From the NCBI RefSeq assembly GCF_963676685.1, contig NC_092353.1:16368001-16432000 (forward strand): a stretch of DNA of 64,000 bases, read 5' to 3'. Source of the DNA: Mytilus edulis. Its lineage: Eukaryota. The notes under the pieces were generated by a model, which made no database searches, was not told the DNA's origin, and worked only from the letters and a program-made list of their open reading frames with translations. Positions 14,701 to 53,479 of the stretch are shown piece after piece (position 1 is the stretch's first letter; every line of letters begins with the position of its first letter). Both the position numbers and the translations under genes were made by a program.

Positions 14701-14770
14701 GAATATCAATTAATAGGAATTATCATATTAATATTTTGCTATTCCAAATTGGTTATTATAATTATTCCAG

Positions 14771-15996
14771 AACATAAAGGAACCCAGTTTCTTTTGGTGA
14801 TTCCAGAGCAGTATAGTAGTGGCATGCCAAGCTTAAGATCTAAAGTGTTAATCGCAACTGACAATTCAACGTTGATTTGGGTCTATTATTCTAAATCACG
14901 AATACATTCATCAACATTCATCCATATTTCAGAACCATACTATTATCCAGAGACAAATCTAGTAACACGTGATGGTTACAATACAGCCGGAATTGAAGTT
15001 AGCTCTGAAGTTCCAATGTCAATGTACGGTTTTATTCAGAACGACTGGGATGACAACAGTGAAGGATTTTTGGCTTTCCCAGTACACTATGCGGCAAAAT
15101 CCTACATCGTTCCCTCATTTACCGTTTCCAAATTAAGAGGTTTTTCGGTTTTTTCACCTTTGGAATCGGATACTAAAATTCAGATAAATCTGAAAATGAA
15201 GTCCGGCTCGTTGGTTTTTCACAAAGTAACGTACAAAAACAAAGATACAATACAAATTGTACTTCAAAAACACGAAACCTTTCAACTTTCACATTCATCT
15301 GACCTAACAGGAACATTGGTCACTGCAAACAAACGATTTCTTTTAATTAGTGGAAATGTTTGCAGTTACATAATAAACATAGGAGGATGCAATCCATTCA
15401 TTGAAATGGTTTTACCAATAAATCAACTCGATAAATTCTCTGTAATACCAAAAATAGTAACACGCCATACATGTACTGTTCGGATATTGGCTGTAAATTT
15501 CACCATTGTTAAAATTAAACTTGGTGAACATCTTATTGAAGTAGAATTACAAGCGAGGCAATTTCATGATTTCAGTTATACTGATAGTTCAAGTGTATCG
15601 GCTTCAGATGATATAATGGTAATCGTGTTTCCTCATGAAGAAGCAAGCACTCGCTCAAATTCATTCATGATGACCATACATGGAACCAATCAGTTTTTAA
15701 ATGAATATTTATTTGTTGTACCTGAGGGTTTTACAAGCTTTCTAAGTGTTGTTGTCGAGACGGTAGATACCGATGGCTTCGTTCTTGATGACATGTCAGT
15801 CACAAATGATTTATTCGATCGCCAATCAATAATATCAGAGTCAATGATTTTTAGTACTTTCTCAATAAGAGTAAAAAGTGGTAGGCACAAGTTCACCCAT
15901 TTGAAAGGTACATTTTTCGGATTGTGGGTGTATGGGAATGCCTGGTATGATGGTTACGGATATCCTGCAGGATTAGCAATGAAAACACATGTGTAG
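14771..15996 (+). CDS. Terminal exon encoding IgGFc-binding protein N-terminal-type domain (FCGBP-like)
   Basis: Long open exon after acceptor ttccag. Family-typical motifs GTQFLLVIP, SEGFLAFP, LQKHETFQL, DLTGTLVTANK..ISGNVC, FIEMVLP, FGLWVYG..YDGYGYPAG. Confidence 0.9.
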
Positions 15997-29111: not shown

Positions 29112-32103
29112 AGCTGTCATCAGTAAATACTACAACCAAGTAGCTGACTTTTACAATATAATAATAAACTTTTGTTGTAACTGAACATTTATCATTTCAA
29201 AGGAAGTATACAAATCTCTAAAATGTAATATGAGAATTGTTTAAAATGGACAAAACAATATAAGGAAGGTTTTTTTTCACTTGCTTCGTTGATTGATAGT
29301 GTTTAGTTATGTCAGTTATGATAGTGCGCCTTTTTGAAGTTGTCTTCGAGATTTTGTTTGTACTTTTTTAAGCGCAATATAAGTCAACCTGAATTTTGTT
29401 CACATATCATTTTTCTATATAATGGAATTATATGAGACAGTCGCACAATTGAGAGGCTTAGCCAGCAATAAAACAGGTTAATCCACCACTTTTTACACGA
29501 GAAACTGCCTGTAAAAAGTCAGGAATATGAAAATAACTGTCCATTCGTTTGATGTAATTTTAACTTTTGATTTTGCCATTCGATTATGGACTTTCTGTTT
29601 TGAATATTCCGTGGAGTTATTTTTTTTATTATTATTTTCTTTTTTTTCTGTACTGAGATCGTAATCTATAGCTTTGAGCAATGTTTCCTTTGGAGTCCTA
29701 ATCAACAAATTCCTTATCATCTCGAGTGTAAAACTGCTTTTAACTGATATCGTCTCTTCGTGTTATTTTACGAAAAATGCCGTTTTTTTATGTTTTTACC
29801 TTCTTCTTTGTAAGAAGCAATGCATAGAGGACAGCAATTGAGGAATATTCTGCATTAAAAACACCACCAACATCTGTCTCAATAGAAAACATAGTTTACC
29901 TAGCATTAGACACATGATTTCTATGTTTAAACACGGTAAGCATCAATAGTTGCTAAAGAAGTAGTGGATGTGGTCAAATCTTCTGGTTTGGCCAATTTGC
30001 ACCTAATTAATTCCAAACTTCAATTTTGTCTGAGCGAGGTTTATATGATTGTTAAAGAAAAATATGTTATAAATATTTTCAGTTCTAAGTACCGAGCAGC
30101 TGATATTACCATTGAAGAGTAAAAAGTAAAATCACAAACATAATAAACTCCGAGGAAAATTTTAAACGGAAAGTCCCTAATCATATGGCAAAATCAAATG
30201 ATTAAACATGTCAAACGAATGGACAATTACTGCCATATTCCTGACTTAGTACAGTCATATTTTCAAATGAAGAAAATGGTTGATTGAACCGGGTTTTATA
30301 GCACTAAATCTCTCACTTGTATGACAGTTCACATCATCCTCGTTAAAAGATGATTATAATTTTATCAATTTCAGCTTCCGTAGCGCTTTTTTGTTTTACT
30401 CTCAAACATTTAAAAGTCATTTACGGGCGTAGACATACATGTTTAATTGAAGAGCGATATTACCAAAGGGAATAAGGTGAATAGCTAAATTTATCAAAGA
30501 TAAATTATGACTCAGTCAGTTTGAACTTTATTTGTAAAGGGAAATTTAAGATGCGTTTGTTATATACATCATGTTTATAAGTACATCATAAAATTGAGAA
30601 TAAAATTGTGAATGTGTCAAAGAGACAACAACCCGATATATGGATCCATAAACTGTAAACTGTACTGAATTAAAAATTGTTATTTCAATAATATGAAACC
30701 TTATTATTCATACCTTGCCATTTGAAAATCTGTATCAGTAAAATACCAATGTCATCCGGCGTTATGCAGTACTGTTGAAAACAATGAAACCAATTTTTGA
30801 GTTTTGAATACTATTAGTTTCGTGAAACTGTGTTTTTATTGCAGAATTGTCTATCTAAGTTTTAATATAAGAAATATTTTTAATATCATATTTGCGTTTT
30901 TGAGACAACTGCTGGATACATGTCATATCTAATTTTTATATGTTTGCCAAGCAATTCTGTTGTAATGTTATGTTTCAAAATATTGCCATAAGGCATCAGA
31001 TGGTTGTAAAACTTTTACATCCACTTGCCAAACAGCTAAAATTGTCGTGATGCTTATAAATAAGATTTTCGTCCCTTGCATCTAAAAATATATTGTGTAA
31101 ATAGATTAATAGATCAGTTGTAAGCAAACCTTACTACAAACAATATAAACAAAGACATGCATCTACGTATGCAAAATAAACTAAAAACCACAAACTCTCC
31201 TTGTGATATATGACTGAAATTCGGGCAAACCGAGATACTTAAAAAGTACAAAGTTATCGGAGGTACCAGGCTTATAATTTGAAAAACACGACCATAAATC
31301 AAAACCAATAAACGTTATGAGAACAAAAGACCAATGGTTGATGATATTGACGCACAAACCTCTTAGTAAAACCTATATTTGTCACAGATACAGTTTAAGG
31401 GATAAAAGATAACAGATTCAGAGTATAATGTAACTGTAACTGCAATGCGACCACATAGTATTCGTATTTCACACGTCCAAATGAAGCATTTCGACAGTAT
31501 CATGTTTACGAATCAAGAATTTGAGGTTGTTACTCATTTGATTTTTCAGTTATTACTGAAGGTTTGAGTGGTATCATATATATGTAGGACTCAAATCTAT
31601 GGTGGGTTCCAAATCTTTGGCAAATGTGACGTCATGCCATCCCAAATCTATAGCAGATTTTTTACAATCCTAATCTATGGTAAGTTTTGTAGTTTCCTAG
31701 TCTTTGACGGATTTTTGTTGTTTCCCCAAATCTATGGCAGATGTTGTGCAAATGGAAAACAATGCAGTACATATACGACTAATGATTTGTCCTAAAGAAG
31801 TTGATATGTACCACAATGGGATCATGTCTATAAACCTTTGTGAAATAAACATTCCATAATTGTCAAATCGTGAACAATTCGTAAATGATGAATTCATATA
31901 CCTTAATACAGACTTCGAGATTGAAAGGGTGTGTCCCGTAAAAATAAACATGTTCTAATCTGTGCATGGTACCTTTTTAACCTATTCATTAATCCAACTA
32001 CACTACCAAGAATTTACTCACGTTTTTTGGTACATTTCTACCCTCGTATATCAGTACTGCTCGGCAAGACAGAAAACTTGTAATATTATACTTTTTGTTT
32101 ATT

Positions 32104-32420
32104 CAGTACTGTTTTTGACAGTACTGTTTCATTACTGATTTTGACAGGACTGTTTCAGTACTGATTTTGACAGTACTGTTTCAGGACTGATTTTAATAGT
32201 ACTGTTTCAGGACTTATTTCGTCAGTACTGTTTCAGTACTGATTTTGACAGTACTGTTTCAGTTCTGTTTTTGTCAGTACTGTTCCAGTACTGTTTCAGT
32301 GCTGATTTTGTCAGTACTGATTCAGTTCTGATTTCGTCAGTACTGTGACAGTACTGATTTCGTCAGAAATGTTTCAGTACTGATTTTGTCAGTAGTGTTT
32401 CAGTGCTGATTTTGTACTGT
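32104..32420 (+). repeat. Left subterminal tandem array, 26-bp unit GACAGTACTGTTTCAGTACTGATTTT (about 12 copies)
   Basis: Directly visible; each unit has two CAGTACTG palindromes. Confidence 0.95.
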
Positions 32421-33178
32421 AAGTATACCGATTTTTTTAATTCTATTATTGAGTTGATATTTTCATTCACCGTTTTAGTAATAAATTTACTTTTTAGTGC
32501 GCACCTTATGATATCCATATGAAAAATAGTTGTTTCTTTGGGTATATTTGCAGCAGTCGATTTGGTGTGGTTAACCTTTTAAATTTGAATGTGTATTGTT
32601 TTAAAAAATATTTGGAACTGAAAACTTATATATCTAGGTAGGTATAGTATGGTACATAATAATTGTGACAAATTTTTATCTTGCGTAGACATCTCTGATT
32701 CAGTGTTGGTCTATCAATAGAGAAATTTTTACAATGTGCATCTCAGTACAATTGGTATCCAAATATAGGTTTGATAATTCTGTGACAATATTACTGTTAT
32801 CCTTTTTTATCTGGTTACGTTTTTGTACTTGTACGAAACTCAGGATTCAATGGTTCATGATTATATTTGTTTTCTTTCTAATGATGCCATATTGATAAAT
32901 CATTTTGTTTATAGGTCTTCAATTTTCACATCGAACATTCCCATTTCTAATCCTGTCACCATTGCTGTTAATCATTCTGATGTGACCAGGTGGAATAAGG
33001 CTCAGATAAATTGAATGCAGAACGTTCATATATTTAATAAATATAAAATAGAATAGAAGGCAACGACCGATCTGAAATATACAGATAATGACAAATAAAT
33101 ACAACTTTACATATAAATGCATATGAATATATCATTTTGTAGCAAATAATATGGTATTGTTACGCAATGATACCTTTA

Positions 33179-36061
33179 TTAATTAACCAGTCCAATATGA
33201 ACTCTAGCCGGGCCAATATGAAGATTGAAAATAGTGTGAAAATCTGACATTCAGGACTTCAATAGTAGTGATTTGAATATGTATCAATGAAAATTGAGGA
33301 TTTTAATCAAAACAATAAAATAGTAACAATTTTATTAAATAATCAACAGTAAATAAACACAACAAGTAAAAAACATGTTTTTATCTAGTTTTCAGATTAA
33401 AGCTCTTGGCTGCAGTTTATAGTATTCTTTCTTTCCCCTGAGTATATGTTAATATTGAAAACACCACCTGTTATAGTTGCACCTGCAAACATGGCCATTG
33501 GGTTGTCATGTTTGTTAGCAGTTTGATTATTTGTATTTGATACATTTGCATTTAAATTATTATGAACTAATGTATTTGAGTTTGAAAGTTCACAAGGTTC
33601 CTCTGAATCTGATGTCGTCTGTAAATCTGAGTTCGGCAACATGACCTTAGATATTGTGTGAGAAGCTTGTTGCTGTTGTTCAATAGACGGTACTGAATAA
33701 TGAGTTAAGGTAATAATGCCTTTCCAGCCTCCTAATTGAGCAACTTCATTGGCAGGTCTACCATTTTGAAGTAGTGTGGTAGCAAAAGTTTTACGTCCCG
33801 AATGATTAACCTTTCTTCCTTGAAGATCTCCTTTTTCTGCCATATTTTTTACCATTTTACCTAATTTATCTTTGCCTATGGTTTGGCGAGTGTACCATAT
33901 TTCCTCATGTTTATTATCTAAAGGCCTCAAATAAAATCTATGTTCATCAGTTAATGTGTCTTGAGGTCTATGCCGTTTGTATTCCTTGTAAACATGAATA
34001 GGGCAATTACTTCCTCCTTCCCCGAAAATCTTTGGCGTAATATCCCGGAAATCCCTGCTTTTTGCTCCACTACGGGTTTTGGTGCTTCTTTCTGAAAAAA
34101 GTATGCTTATGTCAATATTTAAAGAAGAATTATCCTTCCTGTCTGTACAAAACTTTCACTTTTATATAACAAAAAACATGTATTGCATAGTAAATAAGAT
34201 TTGTTTTGATAAATATAAAACAATGGTTAATATCCTTAAAAGCACAAATTACCAACTTTTGTCAGGACTGTTGTACATGTACATCCATTATCCACAGAAG
34301 TATATATTCTGTGATTTCTAAAAGATTTAAAATATCAACTATTTAAATGATGGAAATCATAACATAATCTCACCATTAAATTCCAAATACTCCTTTCCAT
34401 CAGATGTAGCTTTTAACTTGACATCTCCCCATGTCATGTTAACATGGTCTTGTCGACCTCGTAGACCAAAGTATGTTGCATTATTTAAAAACACAGCATT
34501 CAGTAATGCATCAGGGTTTTCTGGAAAAAGAAAAAAAAAAGAACTTAACTAAAATACATGTATCTTAATGTAAATATCCAACTTAAAATAGTATTTAAAG
34601 GACAAATACTGTATCAAAATGCAAAAGACCTCTGGAGACACTCTCATTGTTCAAGACCTTATGTGTATTTTAAACATTTTTTATTAGAACAACCATTTAA
34701 TAATCAGGGATGGATAGAGGGCGACAAGGAAATAAAATAATTTGTTTGCCACAAGGTTAGAAAAATGTTTAATTAAAAGTTACTGACTGACACGCTGGAA
34801 TACAACATTTTTTTTAAACTTACGTGTTCCAATAACGCCTTTCTCCCTCAAGATTTGGATTTCCTCAGTCGTCAAAGGTTCAGCTCTGTTTGGCTTACTG
34901 CCCTTGCCCAATGACTTTAATGCCTTTCGCTTCGCTTCTAATACCCGTCTTGTGTGGTTGAACTCAGGATCCTTTTTAATACTGAAACATTAAAGAAAAG
35001 ATATGCATAATATCTGACATGTAATTTTTGCATGTACATGTTTTATACTTATAGCAAAGAGAAACCAAGGAATATTCATTGTACACAAGCTTAAGATCAT
35101 CAAAACCACATTGACCCAGATGATATATATAGTTTTTACCAAAAAAAATGACACAAGGCTAAAATTAAAATATTGGCACTGAATATTCGAGTCATAATGC
35201 TTGACAGAATAATGCAAAGGCTATCATGCTATATCAAGACAAGGGAGTTACATGTCTCACAGATATCAAATAATCTACATGAAAATAATCGTACCTTATA
35301 CTACTTTTTGAGTCCTTCAAATGTCTATCCAAGCTGTTGAACATAGAGGATAAAGAGTCAGGCTCATATTCGTCACCATTTTTCTTCAGGACTCCAAGAA
35401 AAAATCTTGATAACAGACTGTCCAAGTCTTTGGCAGGTATTTCCACTGAATCACGCATTTCTCCAACAGATATGAAAAAATCCAGCATCACTTTCAAGTC
35501 ACTCTTTGTTTTAGTTTTTGTGTTCTTGTTAACACTTAAAGCTAGAAAAGAGTCAGTGTCTTCATCAGTGACAGAGCGAAACCTCTTGCTACTCGAGCTA
35601 TTTTCTTTGTCTGATTCGTCAATCTCATGATTCTGTGCATTTTCAATGTCCTGCAGAATTTCATTTGGGAAGTTGAAATTCGCTGAATCAACTTCTTCCA
35701 GAATCAAATTTCCTTCCCCATTGACATCCGCGAGATTTCTCTTGATGTACTCTGCCTCCCTATTAGATAAATCGTCGTAGTGAAAATAGTCTTCAACTAA
35801 CGCATCCATCGCATCATCTATATTTTTTATAGAGCTATTGCTCCATCGTTTTGTTGTCATTTTCTCCTGTCAGACGACACTCGCCGTAGTTCTCTAGAGT
35901 TATCGGGATTTCAACCGATTAGTCTAGAGCTAATCGAATATGCTAATATTGGGCTTGCTAAACCCGGGCCAATACGGAAAAATCCGTATTGGCCTTATAG
36001 GACAAAATTATCGATTTGGCAGTTTTACTCGTATTTAGTCAAATAAGCTCCAGTTAATTAA
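33179..36061 (-). mobile_element. Crypton (tyrosine-recombinase DNA transposon), apparently full length
   Basis: YR gene bracketed by TTAATTAA at 33179-33186 and 36054-36061. CCAATA-containing motifs near both ends, including hairpin GGCCAATACGGA-AAAA-TCCGTATTGGCC at 35967-35994. Lies inside another transposon. Confidence 0.8.
33397..35860 (-). CDS. Crypton-type tyrosine recombinase (DUF3504 / KIAA1958-ZMYM-like), 521 aa, 4 exons
   Basis: Minus-strand exons 35860-35295, 34981-34824, 34520-34374, 34091-33397 (1566 nt), all GT-AG, no internal stop. Motifs: KNTKTKT..D, LDSLLSRFF..KKNGDEYEPDSL, LEAKRKALKSLGKG.KPNRAEPLT, FGLRGRQDH, ERSTKTRSG, CPIHVYKEY, WYTRQTIG, NHSGRKT, LGGWK..LTHY. Confidence 0.93.
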
Positions 36062-39000
36062 TAATGTATATTATGTTTCATTACACAATTGCAAATAAAT
36101 AATAATGCAAAACACAGTTAAATGACAACTCTGAATGTAAACAATTTGTTAATCAATGCTAATGAAAACTGTTCACTAAAGTAAGTTGACCATACTACTA
36201 TATACAATACTATGTAACATTGAAAGTTAATTACAGGTAAATAAGAAAAATATAAAGTTTGAAATACAATTAGCAAAGTAAATGAAACTAAATAAAATAT
36301 TTAAGTCAAAAACATTTAATCATAAACTAATTTGAAAAACCCTTAAATGTAAATATCTTATAATGCTGGCTACGGCTTTTGATGTTGTTTCTGGTGTTTC
36401 TTATTCTGTATTGATAATAAAGTTTAAAAGTACAATATATATAGTCAATAGGTGAACTGTTAAACTAGATAGAACTAGATAAAACAACTATTAAGTAAGG
36501 TAGTTTGTCCAATAGCCAGTGGTGAGTGAATATCAAAGAGCCCAGATAGAGTATTTTGGATTCATTGAACCATATAATACAAAATATGTTCAATATAGTA
36601 AGATCATTATAATATAGGGTAAAATAGATATAAACTAATTACAAAGTTGGGAATAATATCAAATAGATAATATGGATATAAATGAACTTGTCCACACTGA
36701 GGAAAGAAAATGAATCGACTTTATAAAGGCTATTATAAACTTTCTTATGTTTCCTCATTTCTGTGTTATGTAAAAATAACAAGAATGCACAATTATGGAA
36801 GGGAATGGTCATCAAAATGTACTTATTACTTTATATACTACCAGAAGTCCAGTAATGGACTGGACTCCTGATACTACATGTATATATAATCAATCACAGT
36901 TGAAATTTGTTGCTAAATAAAAAAAAATTAAAAAATATGATAATTCAATTCATCATCATCAGAGTATTGGTGTTTGCCAGTGGCAAGTATTTCATGCACG
37001 TGTAGCTTTAACAATCAATCTCATTATGTGCTCTTTATAATCAGATTCGTGAAACAACGACAAAAAGACATTTAAATATATACTCATTACTTTATAAATA
37101 CAAAAGTACATTAATGTTTAATAAATTGAAGTGGAAATTCAATTTAATTGAAAATTTAGCGTACATATATTGCACTCAGAAACGTGTCCAATTCCCCCAA
37201 CACGTGTCCATGTGACGTCAATGATCTGATAAACATGTCAAATTGCACGGGCGCCAAAATGGGTTCTGGTTATCAACGTCTAACTGTGTCTTTTAAAAGC
37301 AGAAACCACTTCTGCGGGAAGCCGGTCGTCCAATACCTTCATAGACATACATTTTTAAAAAGACATTTAGGCATCACCGGATAATATTAGAACAAAAGAA
37401 TTTACTTACTATTAAACCATGATTTGAACTTTACAAAACTTATTAAATGCAATGTTTATGAGGTTTTTTTTCTAAATACGCATAACATATTGCCAATGGA
37501 CATTAGGCAATCCATAGGTAATTATGTGTTGTAAACTTAGCCTGCAGTTATGCTTGTTATGAATAACCTATGTTGAACAAACTAATGCTTATATATGACA
37601 TACAATGAAGCACCGGGGAAAAATACAGTATGCAATGTATTAGTTTTCTTAATTGTGAAGTACCTCTGTCTGAACTTTATTATAATAATAATCATATTGA
37701 TAAAAAAAAATCATACACCTGGGACAGAGTTGTAACAGTACTACATAACAACAAACTATAAAATTCAGTTGAAAAGGGCTTATTTAACTCATCAGATGAA
37801 TACAAATAGAAATCCATCTAACAAAAACATAATGGACGTTGCCGGATACTTGTATATCCAAACAAGAAAAAGTCACTAAATATTGATCTGAGAGTACTTG
37901 CAGTTACTGACAGCTAGTTCAAAGCCACTAACAACTAATAACAAAAATCATGCATCCAACTTCTAAGACTTAGTTCATAACTTTATTCATTTAGAACTGT
38001 AGATTATAAAATCTTAGTTTTTTTCCTTCTGTTTAAAATAGATTAAATTACAAAATTACAGATGCAATGTTCAACATATATTACGTTTAAAGACGGCAAA
38101 TTTGTGTTATATATTCTTTAAAATAATATACAAACTAAAGAGACAGAAAGACATAAATTTTGCCTCAAAGGGCAAGCGAGAATAAACCAAGAAACAATTT
38201 TCCAATGTCCTTTTTTTCACGGAGTTAATGCAACTTCAAAACGGCTGGCTTTCATATCATTCCCATTGTTGTTATAAAGTAGAAAAAACAATGAATAATC
38301 GATAATAGTGTGGACCGTGGTGCTTGAATATAAAGAAAAGAGAATAACAGTCAAAATTTATAATAAATAATGAAAAATGATATAGAATAATACACAATAC
38401 AGAAATGAAGAAACCACATCCAGACCCTTTTATAAGTTGCACATTTTAATTTGTTTTGCCTTCTAAATCTTCCTGTTTGGACCGGTCTTGGTTTTCTTAC
38501 TGCAAATGAAACGGCATGTGAAATTTATATGAAGAGATCATGTACACACACTTTTTAGATATATATTTATGTTATTGGTCAATGATTGAATTTATGTCGG
38601 TTCAAAGCTCCATAGAGCTCTGTGGGGGCCCCTTCAGTCCAAAGCCACATTGGTCCGATTGCCCAATAGCTCGACACCCTATAGTCCGACCACACATTGG
38701 AACGACACACGAATAAACTGACACATTATTATTGAGCAATATTTTGTATAAAAAATCTTTATTTGAAGAGGATTTAATCCCAATAGTTAAAAATAATCTC
38801 ACTGAGATTCCTAAAAAAAAATAGCATATTCATAAAGTACATGTATTAAAAATGTGCTTAATGTCCAGTTGCAAGTATTACATGCATGTTCAAAACAGTT
38901 GTTGAATAAGTACAATAGGTAAGTCCCGTAATAGATCTGGGGTGAAAGAAGGTCAAAGAAACTTGGACTGCCACTGGACAATGAAAGCATATATTCAATA

Positions 39001-40954
39001 GGGACAGGAATTTGCCCTGCTGCAGGTTCAGACAAAAGGCCACCGACGACCCCTCACGGCCCCTCAAAGAGTTATTGCAATAGTTCTTAACCTGCAGAGA
39101 TCATGGCACTTTCTTTCTATATGAGGTTTCTGATCAAAAGTGACCAATCTCACAGTCACATTTGTTGAAAATTAAACATCTCGCACAGTTTTACTATCGA
39201 TGTTTTTACTGTTTTTATTGTATCACATAAACATTATCCTTTATGATGACAGACTTGCATTCTGGTGACATTTCCTTAGTAGAATGTGTTCACATATGGA
39301 ACAAATCTTGTCTTTATGTCCCATGTATGTGTCAATTGCTCCTGATCCACTTGACAGCATTTTGTAAATCATCGATACAATCTTTATCTCATGATGTACT
39401 TTTTCAAAGGACAATTTATAAAGTGTTACGTCCATAAATAGTATCAGAAAATGCATGTTGGGAAAAACAACTTTTTATAAATTCATGCAAAATATTTGAT
39501 ACAGTATCTATTGTTATAGGTATCTAAAAATGGATCCCACCAGAACACACAGACTAAGTATACGAGGAAAATAAAGTCTTATAGATCAACAACTAAAAAC
39601 TGTAATGAACAGATGATATATGAGATAAAGATAGAACTGGTATGAAAGGTGACAGTAGAACATTGAAATAATTCGAAAGGTAGGTATAGCTTTACACTCA
39701 ATTCTGATTGTTTTAAGTAAGTATTTGCAGTTTTCCCTATTATTTTATTTCAATAACATGAAATGTTGTAGTATGTCCAAGGGACAACAAACAACCAACG
39801 AGCTAATTTAAAAGAATAAAGAGCAGCAATACAATTCTACAACAATTGAAAGAGTCATTTAAGTTAACAAAGAAGTCTATAAGAAGAACAAATCCGTACA
39901 CACAACTTCTCAGTTAACTGTTTCACAGATTGCATTGATATTGTGCTCGAATAATCAGATTATGTTAATACATATGTGTTTTGGTGCCAATCCAAAGATG
40001 AGAGTAACAGCAGGACATATTTTAACTTGAATCTGAAGGAAATATAAACAAAGATCTCCTTCTCTGAAACTGAATAACAAATTTAAGAGATAATATAATG
40101 AGAATTGCCACTGGTACTAAAAATGAAAAATTCCACAAAAAGAAAACTTTTTTTTTATTTTCAAACTGATGTGTAGTGTATAAAATAATGTAAAGTTGTA
40201 GGATTGCCAATGAGACAACTATCCACCAAATTTGAGACGATGTGGATGTAAACAATAATATACAATTGTGCAGACTTCAACAATGAGAAAACCCATACCG
40301 TATTGTCGGCTACAAAAGACCAAGACATAAACAATATATGAAACAATTCAATGTAGAAAAAATAACGACCTAAATTATAATAAAACAATATAAGAATGTT
40401 AAAGTGCAGCCCGTATTGAAAACATGTAAATTTGCCATGAACCCAGACTCGGGGCGCTAAAATTCATCTCCAAATCGTATAAGATCAGGCCCTGAAGTCA
40501 AAAAAAATTCTCAGTGCTCTGAGCACAACAAAATCGTGCTCGAATCATGAATTCCAGAATTTTGATTGGTTGATTTGTTCATTCTGGAGTATGAGTAAAA
40601 AACTGACTCAAAAGTTTTATGACTTCAAGGCCAGTTTTCAAGTAGGTAAATCAAACATTATTCCATTCTTTTTTTTCATTTTTCTCCATGTATAATATGA
40701 ACCTTGTATAATCAACGTTATACCACCTTTATAAATGCATGTACACTGGTTCTCATTATGTCATGGTTGACCTATGTTTGATCTTATTATTGAACTTTAA
40801 CAAACGTGATAAATATTATAATCCACTTTTTCCTTTCCAGAAACAAGTTGGCAAAGATATGTATCACATGCATAGCAAGAGCAGTGGAAAATAACATTGA
40901 AGGAGAATTATGAAACAGTGATTAAAACATCAAATTGAGAGAGAGAAAAACACT

Positions 40955-41575
40955 TTTTAACCGGATTTTTGTGACAAAAATGTCGGTTATTGATTTGGGG
41001 ATGTACGGCGGGCGGGCGGGCGGCAATCAAATGTTGTCCGTGCATTAACTCATGAACCGTTCAACCAAAGCTTTTCAAATTTTAATATGTTGTTACTGAC
41101 AACTAACTGAAGGTCAAGTTCAATAATGGCGATTTTGATTTTTACCGTTCAGGCGTTATGGTTCTTATAAGATTGAAAAATGAAGTTTCCAGTCGTGTCC
41201 GTGCATTTACGCATGAACTGTTCTACCAAAGCTTCCCAAATTTTAATATGTTGTTACTGATGACAAAATAGAGGTCAACTTTAATAATGACGATTTTGAC
41301 TTTTACCGTTCAGGAGTTATGGTTCTTGAAAGATTGCAAAATGGAGTTTCCAGTAGTGTCCGTGCATTTACGCATGAACTGTTCTACCAAAGCTTCCCAA
41401 ATTTTAATATGTTGTTACTGATGACAAAATAGAGGTCAAGTTCAATAAAGACGATTTTGACTTTTACCGTTCAGGAGTTATGGTTCTTGAAAGATTGTAA
41501 AATGGCGTTTCCTTTCACGTTGTTGCATTTACTCATGAACCATTTAATCTAAGCTTTTCAAATTTTAATATGTTG
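40955..41575 (+). mobile_element. Helentron-associated interspersed element (HINE/pearl-like) with (GGCG)n microsatellite and 161-bp tandem core repeats, 3'-truncated
   Basis: T-rich start, short inverted motif, (GGCG)n at about 41007-41023, then units starting TGTCCGTGCATT at 41035, 41196, 41357 and a partial fourth. Architecture typical of bivalve HINEs. Confidence 0.7.
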
Positions 41576-43057
41576 AGTTCCTAAGCTTGTTTTATGCAGT
41601 CAAAAAAATTAATTTTGATAAGCAAACCATGTATGTTCAAAAATTATAAAGGTTAATATATGTACCAAATGACCACCGTCAGACATAAATCAGTCTGTTT
41701 GAAATCAGTCTTTAGATTTTTATACTTTTACAAAATATTCCTCTGTATGTATGTCTGTAAGATTCAAATCCATCCCAGTTTTATGAGGAACTACAAATCA
41801 AGAGTGAACATGCTATACTTAGTAATGTAGTTTAAATCTGACCCTTTCAATTCCTCGTTAACAGGATGCCTAAATATTGTAACACCAAATTTCATATATT
41901 TTTTTAGTAATACATTGTACGCTCTCAGTTAAGGTTTATAGGAATAGGAAAGAGTACAAAAGTTATGCATACCTAAGTTACTATTCACAATACACACATT
42001 ACAAGTGAATGAAATTGCAGAATGATTAATGTATACAAAAAAAAAGAAATCTGTCAATAAATTTCTTTAACCAGTAAAAATCTAACAATGGGCATATGAT
42101 TGGAAATTTATTTATGAGAAATAAGACTGGAAAAGTGGCCGTATTCTGATTATTCCCTCAGCACACAGCATTAAAGAGAAATAACATAGACTTCAGTCTG
42201 AAGGTACCTGGTATAGAGGGACATGTCTTATAGTAGATTCTCTCCTTGTGGTGAACTAGCATGTTGAAAAAGTAGCTCAGTGCATTATTGGTCTAGTTCT
42301 GTACAAAATAGGTTAATTACATTGTATTTATATCTGAGTATCATGTCCTCTTCCTGCACTCAACTTGCCACTGGATCACATAACATCCATCCAACCATCC
42401 ATCTTCTCAAAAGTAATATACCGAGTTTCAATGTTCAATTCTTGTTCAATATGTTCTGATTTGATTCAAGCAAGATACAAATACATGTAATATGGTATTG
42501 TCAAACAGAAATATTAATAAGATCTTACTGAAAACATAAACCTTATAAAATAACCACACAAGATGCAATTCTGAAAATAAATACGACATAAAGCCAGAAT
42601 ATTAAAAAAAAAAAAAGTAACTGTTGAAGAGCTGGAACTAAAGCAAAACCAAATCAGGACAAAAATAAATCAAAGAAATAAAAAAAAACATAACGCAAAC
42701 AACAACATGTCACGATAAAGAAAATGAATGGAAATGTGGTAAGTTTCCAAAGAGAACAATTAACTCACCCTAAATATACAAAACAACCTAAGACCTTTTA
42801 AATAGGCATCACGGTATGCATTCAAATGTAAACACTGTAACTAATTTTAAGGTAAATAAACTAAATTTTACCTGAAATAAAAACAAATAAAAACCTTAAA
42901 AAAGATGCACATTTACGTAATTAAAGAGAGGACATCTTTTTTTATGAACACAGTGGTCTATTAATAATTGCACTGAAAAGAACAGGTACATGTTTATATG
43001 TTTAACAGTAATTAAAAATTCATTACAGATACAGTACTGCTTTAATTAGTGTTATAA

Positions 43058-43400
43058 TGAAACAGTACTGACGAAATCAGCACTGAAACAGTGCTGTCAA
43101 AATCAGTACTGAAACAGTACTGACAAAATCAGAACTGAAACAGTACTGTCTAAATCAGTACTGAAACAGTACTGACGAAATCAGTGCTGAAACAGTACTG
43201 TCAAAATCAGTACTGAAACAGTATAGTCAAAATCAGTACTGAAACAGTTCTGACGAAATCATTGCTGACACAGTACTGTCAAAATCAGTACTGAAACAGT
43301 ACTGTCAAAATCATTACTAAAACAGTACTGTCAAAATCAGTACTGAAACAGTACTGTCAAAATCAGTACTGAAACAGTACTGTCAAAAACAGTACTGAAT
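43058..43400 (-). repeat. Right subterminal tandem array, reverse complement of the left 26-bp unit (about 13 copies)
   Basis: CAGTACTGTCAAAATCAGTACTGAAA repeated head to tail. Confidence 0.95.
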
Positions 43401-46400
43401 AAACAAAAAGTATAACATTACAAGTTTTCTGTCTTGCCGAACAGTACTGATATATACGAGGGAAGAAATGTACCAAAAAAACGTGAGTAAATTCTTGGTA
43501 GTGTAGTAAGTCCCTTAACAAACAAAACGGAAGTTTTTTCTAAAAAAAATGATAAATAACAGTTTTAGTTTTCAAATAATATTTATTTCATTGTTGATAC
43601 ATCTGTTTTTTTTATTCGAAGACGATTTAAATCTTATTTGTATTCGGTAATTTTTTCTTTCACTTTGAAAACTTTGACAGCCGTAGACAGTTAACTATAA
43701 CTTCTTTTCTAAAAAATATCATGTACTGAAAAAGAGTTGCCGTTGTTCATCGCGGGTTTCGGACTGAAAACACATTCGAATTTTGTCTCTCTTCCGGATT
43801 ATAGGTCACATCTTCCTGTAAACCTTCCTCAAATTGTTTTCGAGGGACATATGTTCATCTGGAATGGTCTCAAATCTATGGATTTTGTCATCGTTAACGG
43901 CGGTGACGATGTAATATGGCGTTATTCAATTGTGACGTTATGTGTTAAATCTAACGTCACATTTGCCATAAATTAGGTATCTGTCATAGATTTGGAACCC
44001 ACCATAGATTTGAGTCCTACATATGTAATAATGTTGTGCGCATTATTTTGGCCAAAAATCAGTGCACATACTTATGTACACCATAAAGAAAACAGATAAA
44101 ATGTGGAACAAAATGAGGAAAGAAATTTATGAATCATTCGAAATATTGGGGATTTTATTATCCCAGGCATATATTACCTTAGCCGTATTTAGCACAACTT
44201 TTAGGAATTTTGGGTCCTCAATGCTCTTAACTTTATACTTGTTTGGTTTTCCAATTATATATTTCTGACTCACACTAGTGAGTCTTGTGTAGATGTAACG
44301 TGCGTCTGGCGTATCAAATTATAAGCCTGGTACTTTTGATAACTATTTTAGTAAGATCTTTGTTTAATTGGTTCAATTGTATGTCTACTTTTTAACGCGT
44401 ACCAATTTTAAGAATAAAGGAACTTGTAACTCTCTCAATTGAATGATAGGGGTTTCGAAATGGAACTATTTCCAAGCGTGGCTGGGGTGGTCAAATATTA
44501 TCACTTCGGTTTTTTTCTACGACTGGCAGTGATATCCTTTCAAACGTGAGGTGTCAGCTGGATGTTGGGGATATAGACATACACAGCCATGTCTGGACTG
44601 AATAGGGACGTTACATCCGATGCCTTATGACAAAATAGTGTCACAGTCTCTGCACGTTATATAACCATTGTAACAACTCGTTGGGGGTCCATCGGTTTCA
44701 TTTTTTGCCATGGCATTGTCAGTTTATTTTCGAATACCCGTGTTTAAATATCCCTTGTTTATCTTTCGCTACTCTTTTAGTGGAAGGCCAAATTTCCTTA
44801 CCTATATTTTGGTTGACCTTCCAGTCAGAAACTCCTCATGTTATTTATTGTTAACGGTTTTACGCCTGGAATATTGTACAGAAACCCGGAATATTTATTA
44901 AACCATTATTTTTTTTCAATATATGTATCACTTTGATTTTCACATGTCCATGGAGATTGATTCGATTTGACATTAGCTCTTTAGTCGTATTCCATTCTCC
45001 CTAACAACTTATTGGACATATGTCTTGAGTCACGTTCGGATTTCCTGCATTACGACTGATTTTGCGTATGCCCTTATGTATCTTCTAAAAAAAAGACACA
45101 AAATTACTGAACTCCGCGGAAATTCAAACGGAAAGTTCTTTGTCAAATTGTAAAATCAAAAGCTCAAACACATCAAACGAATGGATAACAACTGAAATAT
45201 TCTTGTAATGGTATAGACATTTTTCCATGTAGAAAATGGTAGATTGAACCTAGCAGCGCAATGAAGGGGTGCAATATGACACCTCAATAGGTGATTGCCA
45301 TTTTGAAGATTCTGCATGCTGACTTAAAACAATAACCTTTTGCTCTAGCTTTCAATTCCAAGAATGTAGAAAAATTCAAAGTGGTAAACAAGAAAATACT
45401 GAGTGATAATTATTGGTAACCAATAATAAACTGTAAACGTATTACACAACTTAAAATATTTAACAAACTGAAAGAACGCAAAACTGGGTACACTGATTAG
45501 TTCGCGATGAACCAGAAGCTTTTACTTCGCTATCGACATCCGGGTAAAATACATTACTATTAACCTTTTACTTTAAACATGTCGACATTTATGAAAGACG
45601 AATAACCTATTGCAACGGTATATGGTTTGGTTTAAAATAAATGTGATAAGATGTGTAAAAAAAACCAAACTTTAATAAAAATTCAAAACAGAAAGTCCCC
45701 TAATGCTATGAGATTTTGATTCTGAACCTTGTAATAAAATGAATGTGTTATCTTGAGTTTATCAAAAATGTAAATGAAAGGTTTTAATATGTTTACAGTA
45801 TTCTGTATAATTTCTATGTGTGTGATTTATACAATCAGAAATTCGATTAAACTTTTAGCCTGAGAAACCTTTCAGCTGCTCAAGGATTAAATGTCTCATA
45901 ATAGTTGACATACTTATCTATATCAATACAGTACTTTTCAAATCCATATATACAGAAATGTACTGTAATAGCATTTCAATTTTTTTCGCAATCAGTATGA
46001 TATATTAAGGATTTTCTTATATCCCAGGAATAGATCATCTGTATTTGTCACAATTGTTTTGTAATTTTGGGTCCTTACTGCTCTTCAACTTTATATTTTA
46101 TAACTCCAAAACGCTAAAAGTGTTGATCGGATATTTAATCCGTGTCCCAAACAATCACTTCATTCACATTAAACTTTTAAAATGATTGCAACTTAATTTT
46201 AACACGTTGCACTTTTAGTGTATAAGTAAGAGTATAGTTTGTCGTGATAAGGACACAAATATATTGAACGATTTATTAACCAAAACCTATAGAGTGGTTG
46301 ACAAAAATAGTCAAGCGCTAAAAAATATCCCGCGTCTATATATTTGTTTGTTTTTATAATAATTAAGATTAGAACACAATGTTGACTGTTGCACCCTTAT

Positions 46401-50800: not shown

Positions 50801-53479
50801 TATTTTGTCATATCAACCGATTTACTGAACCCGTTGGGTTTTTCGTTTGAATTGTTTTAAATTTTGTCACGTCATTATCCTTTTTTGGTTACAGAAACTA
50901 TATAGTATGAAAATGACAATTTTAAATTCAAAACAATACTTTAATGAACAATTTACTTTTAGGCGTTTTGCAGATCACAACTATCATATCTTGCATCAGA
51001 TGACACCGCTGCTAAGCATACTTTTATCAGACAAGCTCTTAGTGTGCTAGACGGTTCGTATACTTTTCAAACATTCAACGAATATAAAGTCGCACGTTAA
51101 TGAAAATTAAGCGTGCAAAATTGCATTCACGTTGCCTTATAATGGATTTTAAATTGACAAAAGACGCAAATCTCATTTACTTCATTGTTTATGTTTTTTC
51201 ATCTTATAGTGGATGTGTTTTCCTCGGTTTTAGTTTGGAAGCCGGATTTGATTTCTCTCAATCAATTTATGACTTACAAACAGCGGTATACTACTGTTGC
51301 CTTTCAAAAAACCTTTCGACATCTTACAGTAACATCGACAGCGTCAATTACATCATTCAAGAAATCTAAATACGAAAGCTGACCGATTACTTGTGACAAC
51401 TTAACACGTCCAACCAACGGCAAGTTAAAAAGTTTGAAGGTCGTACTTTAACCTATAGTTCAATTGATTACTTCTTATTAATTGTTATTTGGATGGAGAG
51501 TTGTCTCATTGTCACTCATACCACATCTTATTTCTATTGAACACGTATCGGTGCATTTTTAAACATTGCTAAACTTGAACTTTGCATATAACTTCGTATT
51601 ACATTTATTACATTTGAAAGTAATTTACTTTACTTAGGTTTACTTAGGCTCTTTACTGGTTTACTAAAGTTCTTCTACATCAGTCTCTATATCTAAATCT
51701 TCTCCACTTCCGGTGATTTTTTATTTGTAGTCTTCGTACACCATTGTTTGGTTCTTCCAGTGTTTTTCTAGTCTATTCTGAAATGTATTTTTGGTTGGTG
51801 ATGTCACTTGATTTCTGGTAGTGTGTTCCATGTTCTCACCACTCGCAGAGCAAAGGCATTCCTCCTTAATTCTGTTCTTGCTCTCTGTTGAAATGTTTTC
51901 AGACTTTTGCCGCGTATCCCTGTTCGTGTAGTCATATCCTTCCATAATTTAACAAATTGTGCCGCCTCTTTATCATATTTTCCGTTCAGTAGTTTATATA
52001 ATTCAATCATGTCACCTCGGACCCGTTTAAAATTTAGAGATGGTAGTTTTAATTTTTGCAGTCTTTCTGGGTATGTTTAATTTTTGAATCCTGGTAGTTG
52101 TTTAGTTGCCCGGCGCTGCACATTGTCAATCATGTCAAAATATTTTATTTTATATGGATGCCATACTGAGCTTGCAAACTCTAAATGTGTTCTTACGAGT
52201 GTCTTGTATAATGGTATAAAGTATCTGTATCTAAATATTGGAAAGTCCTTCTCAGTAGTGCAAACATGGAATTTGCATATGCAAAGAGGTATACGTCGGA
52301 ATCAAAATTGGAAGGTCATTTATGAAAATTACAAAAAGCACATATCCTTGAGGTATACCTGAAGTTACTTTTGATCATGATGCTGCTTTATTGTTTATTG
52401 AAAAATGTTGTATCCTGTCACTTAGAAAAAACTATCGATCCAATTCAGATCTGAAAGTTCTGTGCCATATGCTCTGAGTTTGTTGATTAGTCTTTTGGGC
52501 GGAACAGTGTCGAATGCTTTCATATAGTCTATGTAAATAACATCGATAGATTTCCCATTATCAAGGGCTTCTAGCCATTTGTCCAATACATTTAAAATTT
52601 GAATAATGTAGATCTGTCTGATATAAATCCATAGTGAAGATCAAATCTTTCATTTTTGGTATATTATAATAATCACTGTGATATAAACATGAATGTCTCT
52701 TTTTCTTCACTAGGTGCGAAAATAAAGGATTTTTTTATCGGTGGAAACGACCGAGTCTTTGAAGGTCAGTGGCGTTGGTTGGAGACTGGCATGCCAATTA
52801 CTAAATTTACAGCTTGGGCTCCAAACAGTCCATCAACAAATATGACACTGGCAATGAAGCAAAATTGTATGATGTTGACATGGGTGGACAATGACGTGTA
52901 TTGGACTGACCACGACTGTTCTGACCGTAGAGGACATTTCATTTGTGAAAAGCCGTAAGCATTTTTTTACATAACGTTACGGAAATATTGCGTGTAGACA
53001 ATACGAATGCCGTATCAACTGTAATAAACGATCAACAGATTCAAAAACATTCATTTACGCGAAAACACATCTTACTTTACAACACAAAAAAAGAAAGGAG
53101 TGGAGTGAAGATGTTGTTTGAAAAGTTATGTGGGGAAACCCTTGCTAATACCGTTTTGATTTAGTTAAGGAATTTCGGTTATTTATAAGCACATAACCTC
53201 GGACTTGCCTTCATTCCTCCCTATTGGATAATAGAATGATCGTTACACGTGACAAAAGCGCTTATCAAATAAATGTATCTTACGTATAAATTATCATTGT
53301 TCACGACAAAGTGACTGGCTACAGAAAACACCGAAAATTACACACATTTTTACATTTTATTTATGTGAGTTGGTATAAGCAATCAAGAAAAAAGGTTTTG
53401 CAAATGATAGATTTAATTGATTCTTCAATTGTATCTTTTCAGGGTGTCTTCCGTCACTAGCGCACCAGTAGTCGGTTGA
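47808..53479 (+). CDS. C-type lectin 4 (perlucin-like), secreted, 168 aa
   Basis: Exons 47808-47850, 48995-49089, 50963-51053, 52714-52954, 53443-53479 (507 nt). MGNLTLHLLLCVFVVICTAKCPKDW..; FIGGNDRVFEGQWRW; SPS and WTD motifs; ends PVSSVTSAPVVG*. AATAAA at 53501. Confidence 0.92.
51623..52635 (-). mobile_element. CR1-clade LINE 3' fragment in intron 3 of lectin 4, internally deleted and frameshifted
   Basis: Minus strand encodes VLDKWLEALDNGKSIDVIYIDYMKAFDTVP.., LYKTLVRTHLEFASSVWHPY, VQRRATKQLPG, YPERLQKLKLPSL..RGDMIELYK, RRNAFALRVVRTWNTLP. AAGTA-type microsatellite tail near 51623-51646. Confidence 0.9.

What the first reader, a model, noticed from the sequence alone, without database searches (positions are those of the whole stretch)
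31584..44020. Triple-nested transposon: Crypton inside CACTA-like element inside an ATAT-flanked MITE, all termini still readable
Seen: three concentric pairs of ends, ATAT|GTAGGACTC..GAGTCCTAC|ATAT, TA|CACTACCAAG..CTTGGTAGTG|TA and TTAATTAA..TTAATTAA, plus a HINE at 40955-41575. This gives the insertion order. Inference: both outer layers keep well-matched TIRs, so a trans-acting DDE transposase could move the whole block, carrying an intact recombinase gene as cargo. The block sits inside a lectin tandem array and is a candidate hemizygous or presence/absence region.
Basis: partly seen in the sequence, partly recalled or inferred. Interest (0 to 1): 0.8.

Follow-up and report, generated by a model that had tools for sequence, protein, structure and literature searches.

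The report
Four-deep transposon nest in mussel DNA
This is an ordinary but cleanly readable pile of jumping genes inserted one inside another in a mussel-like genome. It has four layers, not three, and the innermost belongs to a very young tyrosine-recombinase (Crypton) family. I found no sign that the pile ever moved as one block.

Summary
The two outer end pairs are real, at the stated coordinates, and belong to multi-copy families.

- **Outer element (L1), 31584-44020.** A ~1 kb non-coding TIR element. It always sits in an ATATAT target, with a 4-6 bp duplication.
- **Middle element (L2), 32001-43503.** An 11.5 kb non-coding TIR element. It made an exact TA duplication, because intact L1 copies read CCAAC-TA-GTAAG. 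This is Tc1/mariner-type target behaviour, not CACTA.
- **A missed layer.** The Crypton sits in a solo Ty3/Gypsy LTR (32981-36696, TG..CA ends, CTGA duplication), not directly in L2.
- **Crypton limits.** They are 33151-36065, not the TTAATTAA boxes. The family has about 15 copies at 99-100% identity, a DUF3504-type recombinase in four open coding segments, no TSD, and AATAAT microhomology with its target.
- **Terminal palindrome.** Full-length copies and an ~850 bp non-autonomous derivative carry a 146-nt terminal palindrome. The window copy has lost 122 bp of it.
- **HINE-like element, 40952-41576.** It replaces about 80 bp of the L2 backbone.
- **Co-mobilisation.** All four tested junction types occur only at this locus in the assembly, so it is unsupported.
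- **Presence/absence.** Not shown. Contigs from two other organisms run 25 nt across the L1/L2 junction.

This is a new member of known kinds, of low to moderate interest.

The parts
31578..31583 (.). Left target copy of L1 (ATATAT). The right partner is ATATGT at 44021-44026.
   Evidence: In 25 copies both flanks read ATATAT or a variant. L009 (ATGTAT), L054 (ACATAT) and L071 (AAATAT) carry the same non-palindromic 6-mer on both sides.
31584..32000 (+). L1 left arm. L1 is a ~1 kb non-coding TIR element, and this is the outermost and oldest layer. The TIR starts GTAGGACTCAAATCTATGG, and CAAATCTATGG motifs repeat near the end.
   Evidence: Other copies are 80-92% identical and run straight through position 32000/43506.
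43504..44020 (+). L1 right arm. It starts with the second copy of the TA duplicated by L2 (43504-43505).
   Evidence: The TIR matches the left arm 33/33.
32001..43503 (+). L2, an 11.5 kb non-coding TIR element with about 7.2 kb of its own backbone. Its TIRs are about 110 bp and start CACTACCAAG. Inverted arrays of a 26-bp unit lie at 32102-32415 and 43058-43399. Its TSD is TA.
   Evidence: All 20 ends seen are flanked by TA. A collinear 11.5 kb copy lies at C2:37435353-37446872. No ORF of 130 aa or more (150 or more for some loci) lies in backbone sequence in the copies examined.
32981..36696 (-). Solo LTR of a Ty3/Gypsy retrotransposon. It is 801 bp of LTR, split by the Crypton into 32981-33150 and 36066-36696. 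Its ends read TG..CA. The 4-bp TSD CTGA lies at 32977-32980 and 36697-36700.
   Evidence: The empty site GTTAATCATT-CTGA-GGAAAG occurs in L2 copy L048. The full element L047 has 804-bp LTRs that are 100% identical, a gag of 335 aa and a pol of 1327 aa with PR-RT-RH-IN domains.
33151..36065 (-). CryptonA-type tyrosine-recombinase element, 2915 bp here and about 3036 bp in full-length copies. On the + strand it begins ATGGTATT and ends ..CCAGTTAATTAATAAT. AATAAT occurs at both junctions (33145-33150 and 36060-36065). This copy lacks 122 bp of the 146-nt terminal palindrome.
   Evidence: LTR copies without the insert read ..GCAAATAAT-GTATATT.. (and the joint 33144>36060).
33397..35860 (-). Recombinase gene in four open coding segments. 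These lie within 35860-35237, 34989-34783, 34548-34360 and 34155-33397, counting the stop. The catalytic residues are visible: R in GLRGRQ, HxxR in NHSGRKT, W in GGWKG, and Y in LTHY.
   Evidence: Pfam gives DUF3504 at 3.8e-10 (profile 76-161) and 1.3e-5 (profile 19-68), Phage_integrase at 1.7e-6, and QRICH1 domain at 1.3e-5, below its cut-off. Splice sites were not verified, and the segments were not joined.
40952..41576 (+). HINE-like (pearl/MgE-type) element. It has a left flank with a hairpin (CCGGATTTTTGT/ACAAAAATGTCGG), a (GGCG)n microsatellite, and 3.4 units of 161 bp. It replaces about 80 bp of L2 backbone.
   Evidence: The anatomy was compared with PMC7492417.
52656..52958 (+). Terminal C-type lectin exon of the next gene downstream. 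Similar exons end at about 4176, 21550 and 28366.

Best explanation
The stretch records successive, independent insertions at one spot, either between two C-type lectin genes or inside an intron of one.

1. A ~1 kb non-coding TIR element (L1) inserted at an ATATAT site.
2. A large non-coding TIR element (L2) inserted into a TA inside L1 by a cut-and-paste DDE transposase supplied in trans. The TA target marks it as Tc1/mariner/pogo-type. Its backbone was then about 7 kb.
3. A Ty3/Gypsy retrotransposon integrated into L2 and duplicated CTGA. It later collapsed to a solo LTR by LTR-LTR recombination.
4. A HINE-like rolling-circle element landed in a T-rich stretch of L2, and about 80 bp of backbone is missing there.
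5. Last, a CryptonA element integrated into the LTR by tyrosine-recombinase recombination. The recombination joined its circle junction (..AATAAT|ATGG..) to an AATAAT in the target. No bases were duplicated.

The Crypton family is very young, with about 15 copies at 99-100% identity. Its mobility probably depends on its two conserved ends, including a 146-nt terminal palindrome. The window copy has lost most of that palindrome, so it is probably crippled in cis even though its gene looks intact.

The order of layers, the duplications and the family memberships are shown. The LTR-LTR collapse, the trans-acting enzymes and the role of the palindrome are inferred.
For: **L1.** It is a high-copy family, and intact copies run through the L2 insertion point with a single TA.

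**L2.** TA flanks 20 of 20 ends. Both deletion derivatives and long collinear copies exist.

**Solo LTR.** The ends read TG..CA, the TSD is CTGA, and the empty site occurs in L2 copy L048. The full-length element has identical 804-bp LTRs and PR-RT-RH-IN domains.

**Crypton.**
- About 15 dispersed copies are 99-100% identical with shared termini.
- Empty LTR sites have a 6-bp overlap (the joint appears in three of the four runs laid).
- DUF3504 scores 3.8e-10 and Phage_integrase is above its cut-off.
- Left flanks vary while the element's 3' end stays constant at AATAA(T/A).
- The palindrome folds at -68.7 kcal/mol with z = -19.
- The non-autonomous derivative keeps only the left 165 bp and the right 187 bp.

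**Relative ages.** Identity to relatives fits the nesting order. L1 is 80-92% identical to other copies, L2 up to 95%, the LTR 92-96%, and the HINE-like element 94-95%. The Crypton differs at 3 of 2909 positions.

**Junctions.** Each junction is unique to this locus.
Against: - No transposase was found for L1 or L2, so their superfamilies rest on TSD and termini alone.
- The L1 TSD register (6 bp, or 4 bp TATA with TGT..ACA ends) is not resolved.
- The genome search scores only the best 40 candidates per query, so 'unique junction' is a strong indication and not an exhaustive proof.
- The splice model of the recombinase has no RNA support.
- The loss of the palindrome in the window copy could be an assembly artefact at a long hairpin.
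- The HINE-like 3' palindrome was not found.
Confidence: 0.85

Rival explanations
1. The block is a composite that a trans-acting DDE transposase can move, or has moved, as a whole by using the L1 or L2 TIRs. It would carry the Crypton recombinase gene as cargo, like MarCry-1_FO of Fusarium.
For: - Both TIR pairs are well kept: L1 matches 33/33 and L2 105/113.
- L2 elements of about 11.5 kb exist elsewhere, so that size is tolerated.
- A Mariner-Crypton composite with TA duplications is described in PMC3212892.
Against: - All four junction types are found only at this locus.
- L1 copies are 80-92% identical, so the family is old.
- No autonomous partner was seen for either family.
- The Crypton family spreads on its own, into unrelated sites.
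Confidence: 0.05
2. L2 is a true CACTA/EnSpm (CMC) derivative whose TSD only looks like TA.
For: The termini read CACTA..TAGTG, and there are long inverted subterminal arrays of a 26-bp unit. Both are CACTA-like traits.
Against: - The filled and empty sites differ by exactly TA.
- The third base outward varies (c, g, a) at the 20 ends.
- ITm elements make TA duplications (PMC10045372). That CACTA/EnSpm elements make 3-bp ones is from my own knowledge.
Confidence: 0.07
3. The block, or its innermost layer, is a hemizygous presence/absence variant in the population.
For: - None of the contigs shown for the four runs carries the window-specific LTR/Crypton junction or the window's deleted-palindrome form.
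- The Crypton family is young.
- Bivalves carry many hemizygous TE insertions, including Crypton-A (bioRxiv 10.64898/2026.02.10.705023).
Against: - For the outer layers, contigs from organisms A and C run 25 nt across the L1/L2 junction with no mismatch. Contigs from X1, X2 and X10 run 18-20 nt from the unique flank into L1.
- The assembly holds no empty-site haplotig.
- Contigs show presence, not absence.
Confidence: 0.4
4. The nest is an assembly artefact, made by chimeric joins between repeats.
For: The region is almost wholly repeats. The palindrome deletion is seen only here.
Against: - Every layer closes with a matching duplication or microhomology, and the host sequence continues exactly across it.
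- Independent contigs from other individuals run 25 nt across the L1/L2 junction.
Confidence: 0.03

Closest known systems
CryptonA elements (Kojima and Jurka 2011, PMC3212892). Polymorphic Crypton-A insertions are also reported in oysters (bioRxiv 10.64898/2026.02.10.705023).
   Same: - A single gene for a tyrosine recombinase that matches DUF3504 and keeps the catalytic residues.
- No RT, no TIRs and no LTRs.
- A short direct repeat at the ends that reflects microhomology with the target.
- A non-autonomous derivative that keeps only the ends, as described for CryptonI-1N1_RPro.
   Different: - One end is a 146-nt near-perfect palindrome. The 2011 survey reports no terminal repeats in animal Cryptons, and the two Crypton papers I searched do not mention palindromes or hairpins.
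- The junction reads T|ATGG. That recalls the TATGG termini of CryptonS, a different group.
MarCry-1_FO, the Mariner-Crypton composite of Fusarium oxysporum (PMC3212892)
   Same: A Crypton recombinase gene lies inside TIRs of a TA-duplicating element.
   Different: MarCry exists as several copies more than 97% identical, each with its own TA duplication, and it encodes the DDE transposase. Here the composite occurs once. The Crypton is separated from L2 by a solo LTR, and no transposase is present.
Tc1/mariner/pogo (ITm) non-autonomous elements
   Same: An exact TA duplication, TIRs, and short deletion derivatives of 0.5-1.8 kb alongside long copies.
   Different: The element is very large (about a 7 kb backbone), has 110-bp TIRs starting CACTA, and carries arrays of 300 bp or more of a 26-bp subterminal unit. 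No transposase was found, so ISL2EU-type (1-4 bp duplications) cannot be excluded.
HINE / pearl / MgE elements of bivalves (PMC7492417, PMC4067079)
   Same: A left flank with a short hairpin, a tetranucleotide microsatellite, an array of about 160-bp repeats, a T-rich insertion site, and no duplication.
   Different: No 3' sub-terminal repeat plus palindrome was seen, and the element ends inside a repeat-like unit. The insertion goes with a loss of about 80 bp of host sequence.
Ginger1 (4-bp duplication) or IS3EU/GingerRoot (6-bp duplication) as candidates for L1
   Same: L1 has a 4-6 bp duplication. If the register is TATA|TGTAGG..CCTACA|TATA, it has TG..CA ends. GingerRoot termini are occasionally TG..CA (PMC10045372).
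   Different: IS3EU termini are TA..TA, which L1 does not fit in any register. No transposase was found, so this is a lead only.

Membership tests
CACTA/EnSpm (for L2) | 3-bp target site duplication | tested here: not met
   The filled site reads CCAAC-TA[L2]TA-GTAAG. Empty paralogues read CCAAC-TA-GTAAG. The third base outward varies at 20 ends.
CACTA/EnSpm (for L2) | CACTA/G termini and subterminal repeats | tested here: met
   The termini read CACTACCAAG..CTTGGTAGTG. Inverted arrays of a 26-bp unit lie at both ends.
CACTA/EnSpm (for L2) | CMC-type transposase in an autonomous member | tested here: inconclusive
   The copies examined hold no ORF of 130 aa or more (150 or more for some loci) in backbone sequence, and none was scanned for a transposase domain. 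The genome was not searched exhaustively.
Tc1/mariner/pogo (ITm) (for L2) | TA target site duplication | tested here: met
   The rule is taken from PMC10045372.
Tc1/mariner/pogo (ITm) (for L2) | DDE/D transposase of the ITm type | tested here: inconclusive
   No coding capacity was found in any copy examined.
Crypton (CryptonA) | Tyrosine recombinase with an R..HxxR..Y catalytic set and similarity to DUF3504 | tested here: met
   DUF3504 scores 40.5 bits (cut-off 29.7) and Phage_integrase 28.4-29.3 bits (cut-off 27.1). The catalytic residues were read. The segments were searched one by one, not joined.
Crypton (CryptonA) | No reverse transcriptase and no second enzyme | tested here: met
   The element is about 3.0 kb, and no other long open frame stands out as a second gene.
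Crypton (CryptonA) | No TIRs or LTRs, and short direct repeats that reflect microhomology rather than duplication | tested here: met
   The empty site has a single AATAAT. Left flanks vary while the element's 3' end is constant.
Crypton (CryptonA) | Excision as a circle and reintegration | not testable with these tools
   This needs outward PCR or reads across a circle junction.
Ty3/Gypsy LTR retrotransposon (solo LTR) | TG..CA ends, a 4-6 bp duplication, and homology to the LTRs of an element with PR-RT-RH-IN | tested here: met
HINE (non-autonomous Helentron) | 5' sub-terminal repeat with its complement, a microsatellite and a tandem array, inserted at a T-rich site without duplication | tested here: met
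   compared with PMC7492417.
HINE (non-autonomous Helentron) | 3' sub-terminal repeat followed by a palindrome, and an autonomous Helentron partner | tested here: inconclusive
   No 3' palindrome is evident in 41480-41576. A partner was not searched for.
MITE (for L1) | Short, non-coding, with TIRs, a TSD and a high copy number | tested here: met
   All features are present. At about 1.0 kb it is longer than a typical MITE.
Composite transposon of the MarCry type | The same composite at two or more loci, each with the outer element's duplication | tested here: not met
   The junctions are unique in the assembly.

The most novel reading that the evidence does not exclude
The Crypton family is active now in several mussel species. 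Its 146-nt terminal palindrome, together with the adjacent TTAATTAA box and the AATAAT|ATGG junction, would be its recombination site. That would be the first defined cis-acting site for an animal Crypton. The window copy, with an intact gene but a deleted palindrome, would be a natural cis-dead, trans-competent copy.
Probability: 0.3. Interest if true: 0.55.

Novelty: new member of a known kind. Interest (0 to 1): 0.28.

Why it matters
The nest itself is routine for a genome that is roughly half repeats.

- **As a dated stack.** It gives exact ends and target rules for five mussel repeat families.
- **As a caution.** CACTA-like ends do not make an element a CACTA element.
- **The Crypton family is the useful part.**
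  - It has about 15 near-identical autonomous copies.
  - A non-autonomous derivative keeps only the two ends.
  - It has a long terminal palindrome.
  - Together these make it a good candidate for the first experimental look at how animal Cryptons recognise their ends and targets.

Tried and rejected
- **Transposase in L2.** I looked in six long loci and in the window backbone and found none.
- **Paralogous empty site for L1.** I searched inside the lectin array and then the whole assembly. The flank is unique, so no empty site or haplotig exists.
- **Genome-wide Lectin_C scan.** It did not reach the window's exons among the best 150 hits and added nothing.
- **Reads.** Only Logan contigs were available, and they break at repeats. 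They could not show absence or depth halving, and the 6 kb limit kept the two sides of the 11.5 kb block out of one call.
- **Earlier notes.** A word search gave no lead on L1 or L2.
- **Big protein searches.** I skipped them, because Pfam settled the recombinase family.
- **Joined coding segments.** They were searched one at a time.
- **Consensus sequences.** I built none for the LTR element or the Crypton.

Full report
**Setting.** The window is C10:16368001-16432000 of a 1.37 Gb assembly with about 31% G+C. An earlier agent's note in this scan calls the genome a mussel, which I did not verify. C-type lectin terminal exons on the + strand end near 4176, 21550, 28366 and 52949, and Pfam Lectin_C scores 4.1e-5 for 52656-52958. 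It sits either between two genes or in an intron of the downstream one.

**Layer 1 (L1), 31584-32000 plus 43504-44020.**
- The stated ends are present, and the arms match 33/33.
- The family is abundant, with 546 first-look candidates.
- Intact copies are 0.9-1.1 kb and 80-92% identical to this one.
- In 25 copies both flanks read ATATAT or a one-base variant.
- Three copies carry the same non-palindromic 6-mer on both sides: ATGTAT, ACATAT and AAATAT. These bases are therefore a target duplication, not part of the TIR.
- The data fit either a 6-bp duplication, or a 4-bp TATA duplication with TGTAGG..CCTACA ends.
Copy L009 would then read GTAT against ATGT.
- No copy encodes a protein, so the superfamily stays open. 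Ginger-like or GingerRoot-like is only a lead, based on the TSD rules in PMC10045372.

**Layer 2 (L2), 32001-43503.**
- The TIRs are about 110 bp (105/113 matching).
- Inverted arrays of a 26-bp unit follow them.
- All 20 ends seen in the genome are flanked by TA, and the next base outward varies.
- Intact L1 copies L003 and L008 read CCAAC-TA-GTAAG, exactly where the window reads CCAAC-TA[L2]TA-GTAAG.
- That meets the Tc1/mariner/pogo rule and fails the 3-bp rule of CACTA. The label 'CACTA-like' holds only for the look of the ends.
- The family has short derivatives (0.5-1.8 kb) and long copies. One collinear 11.5 kb copy lies on C2.
- The copies examined hold no ORF of 130 aa or more (150 or more for some loci) in backbone sequence.
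- Its own backbone here is about 7.2 kb: 32001-32980, 36697-40951 and 41577-43503.

- 32981-33150 plus 36066-36696 is 92-96% identical to an 804-bp repeat. Elsewhere that repeat occurs as direct pairs 6.48 kb apart.
- In locus L047 the two repeats are 100% identical. They flank a 335-aa gag (PNMA, zinc knuckle) and a 1327-aa pol with protease, RT, RNase H and integrase domains. This is a young Ty3/Gypsy family.
- The window holds a complete solo LTR with TG..CA ends and a CTGA duplication.
- L2 copy L048 shows the empty site GTTAATCATT-CTGA-GGAAAG.

**Layer 4, the Crypton.**
- *Limits and copies.* Copy comparison sets the limits at 33151 and 36065. About 15 dispersed copies are 99-100% identical.
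- *Host site.* LTR copies without the insert read ..GCAAATAAT-GTATATT... The AATAAT is present at both junctions in the window. The insert-free LTR form also appears as a joint in three of the four runs laid.
- *Target rule.* In ten copies the left flank varies ([A/C]NTWNT), while the element's right end is constant at AATAA(T/A). This is insertion without duplication at sites with microhomology to the element's 3' end, which is the Crypton hallmark (PMC3212892, PMC13465315).
- *Gene.* It lies on the minus strand in four open segments.
  - DUF3504 scores 3.8e-10 (profile 76-161) and 1.3e-5 (profile 19-68), in collinear order.
  - Phage_integrase scores above its cut-off.
  - The first segment has a sub-threshold QRICH1-domain match.
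  - R, HxxR, W and Y are in place.
  - Kojima and Jurka report that CryptonA recombinases match DUF3504 while DIRS and Ngaro recombinases do not.
- *Differences from other copies.* The window copy differs from the form assembled in all four public runs at three positions: 33713, 35031 and 35882.
- *TTAATTAA boxes.* The boxes at 33179 and 36054 are not the ends, and their number in the window is what chance gives. Both do lie inside the conserved terminal segments.

**Palindrome and the non-autonomous derivative.**
- Full-length copies (about 3036 bp) begin ATGGTATT and run straight into a 146-nt near-perfect palindrome. As DNA it folds at -68.7 kcal/mol with z = -19.
- The window copy has lost 122 bp of it between short ATT repeats.
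- An ~850 bp non-autonomous derivative has at least five copies by the hits. It keeps only the left 165 bp (the palindrome plus the TTAATTAA box) and the right 187 bp.
- This suggests that these ends are what the recombinase needs, and that the window copy is impaired in cis. That is an inference.

**HINE-like element, about 40952-41576.**
- It has a left hairpin, a (GGCG)n microsatellite and 3.4 units of 161 bp. It is 94-95% identical to a very abundant family.
- Five loci from four other L2 copies carry about 75-90 bp of backbone in its place, so the insertion came with a small deletion.
- The anatomy fits bivalve HINE/pearl/MgE elements (PMC7492417), but I did not see the 3' palindrome.

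**Co-mobilisation.**
- 100-bp probes across the L1/L2, L2/LTR, LTR/Crypton and L2/HINE junctions each gave one full-length hit, the window itself.
- Only the best 40 candidates are scored per query, so this is strong but not exhaustive.
- A precedent for such a composite exists (MarCry-1_FO, PMC3212892), but nothing here shows that this block ever moved as one.

**Presence/absence.**
- Only Logan contigs were available.
- Contigs from X1, X2 and X10 run 18-20 nt from the unique left flank into L1.
- Contigs from X1 (organism A) and X13 (organism C) run 25 nt across the L1/L2 junction with no mismatch.
- These crossings are shorter than the tool's 31-nt bridging rule. Even so, they indicate that the outer layers are shared among organisms.
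- No contig shown carries the window's LTR/Crypton junction, so the youngest layer may be polymorphic. Contigs cannot show absence.
- The left flank has no second copy in the assembly, so no empty-site haplotig exists.
- The same 2926-nt Crypton contig is present in runs from all three organisms.

**Verdict.** The count of layers, one pair of ends and one family label are wrong, and the co-mobilisation inference has no support. The nest is ordinary. The Crypton family is a well-defined new member of a known kind, with an unusual terminal palindrome.

Noticed in passing
L074:59-912 (G000:C9:56616008-56616861). Similar places are at C9:540198-540927, C4:24457926-24458651, C7:34388656-34389380 and C9:12911053-12911945.: An ~850 bp non-autonomous derivative of the Crypton. 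It keeps only the left 165 bp (the palindrome and the TTAATTAA box) and the right 187 bp, with about 510 bp of unrelated sequence between them.
   Followed up: partly
L024:1376-1521, and the same place in L025-L034: A 146-nt near-perfect palindrome at the left end of every full-length Crypton copy. Only the window copy lacks it.
   Followed up: partly
L047:1434-8715 and L050:1360-8641: Full-length Ty3/Gypsy elements. In L047 the two 804-bp LTRs are 100% identical, and both loci have open gag (335 aa) and pol (1327 aa) frames. The family looks recently active. I observed only and built no consensus.
   Followed up: partly
window 33156-36064, in runs X1, X2, X10 and X13: The same 2926-nt Crypton contig, with the same three differences from the window copy, is assembled in runs labelled as three different organisms. 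The family is shared almost unchanged among them.
   Followed up: no
window 44137-44349, with related copies near 16870, 26128, 28447, 45999, 55814 and 56170: A ~210 bp dispersed repeat, 72-80% identical between copies, lies just right of the block and occurs several times in the window.
   Followed up: no
window 14749-15996 (+): A 415-aa open frame with a strong IgGFc_binding domain (7.8e-37), upstream of the lectin genes.
   Followed up: no
window 32819-32824: Several runs show contigs that leave the window sequence here (loose ends). L2 copy L048 has about 1 kb extra at this point. It is a module boundary or an insertion hotspot in the L2 backbone.
   Followed up: no
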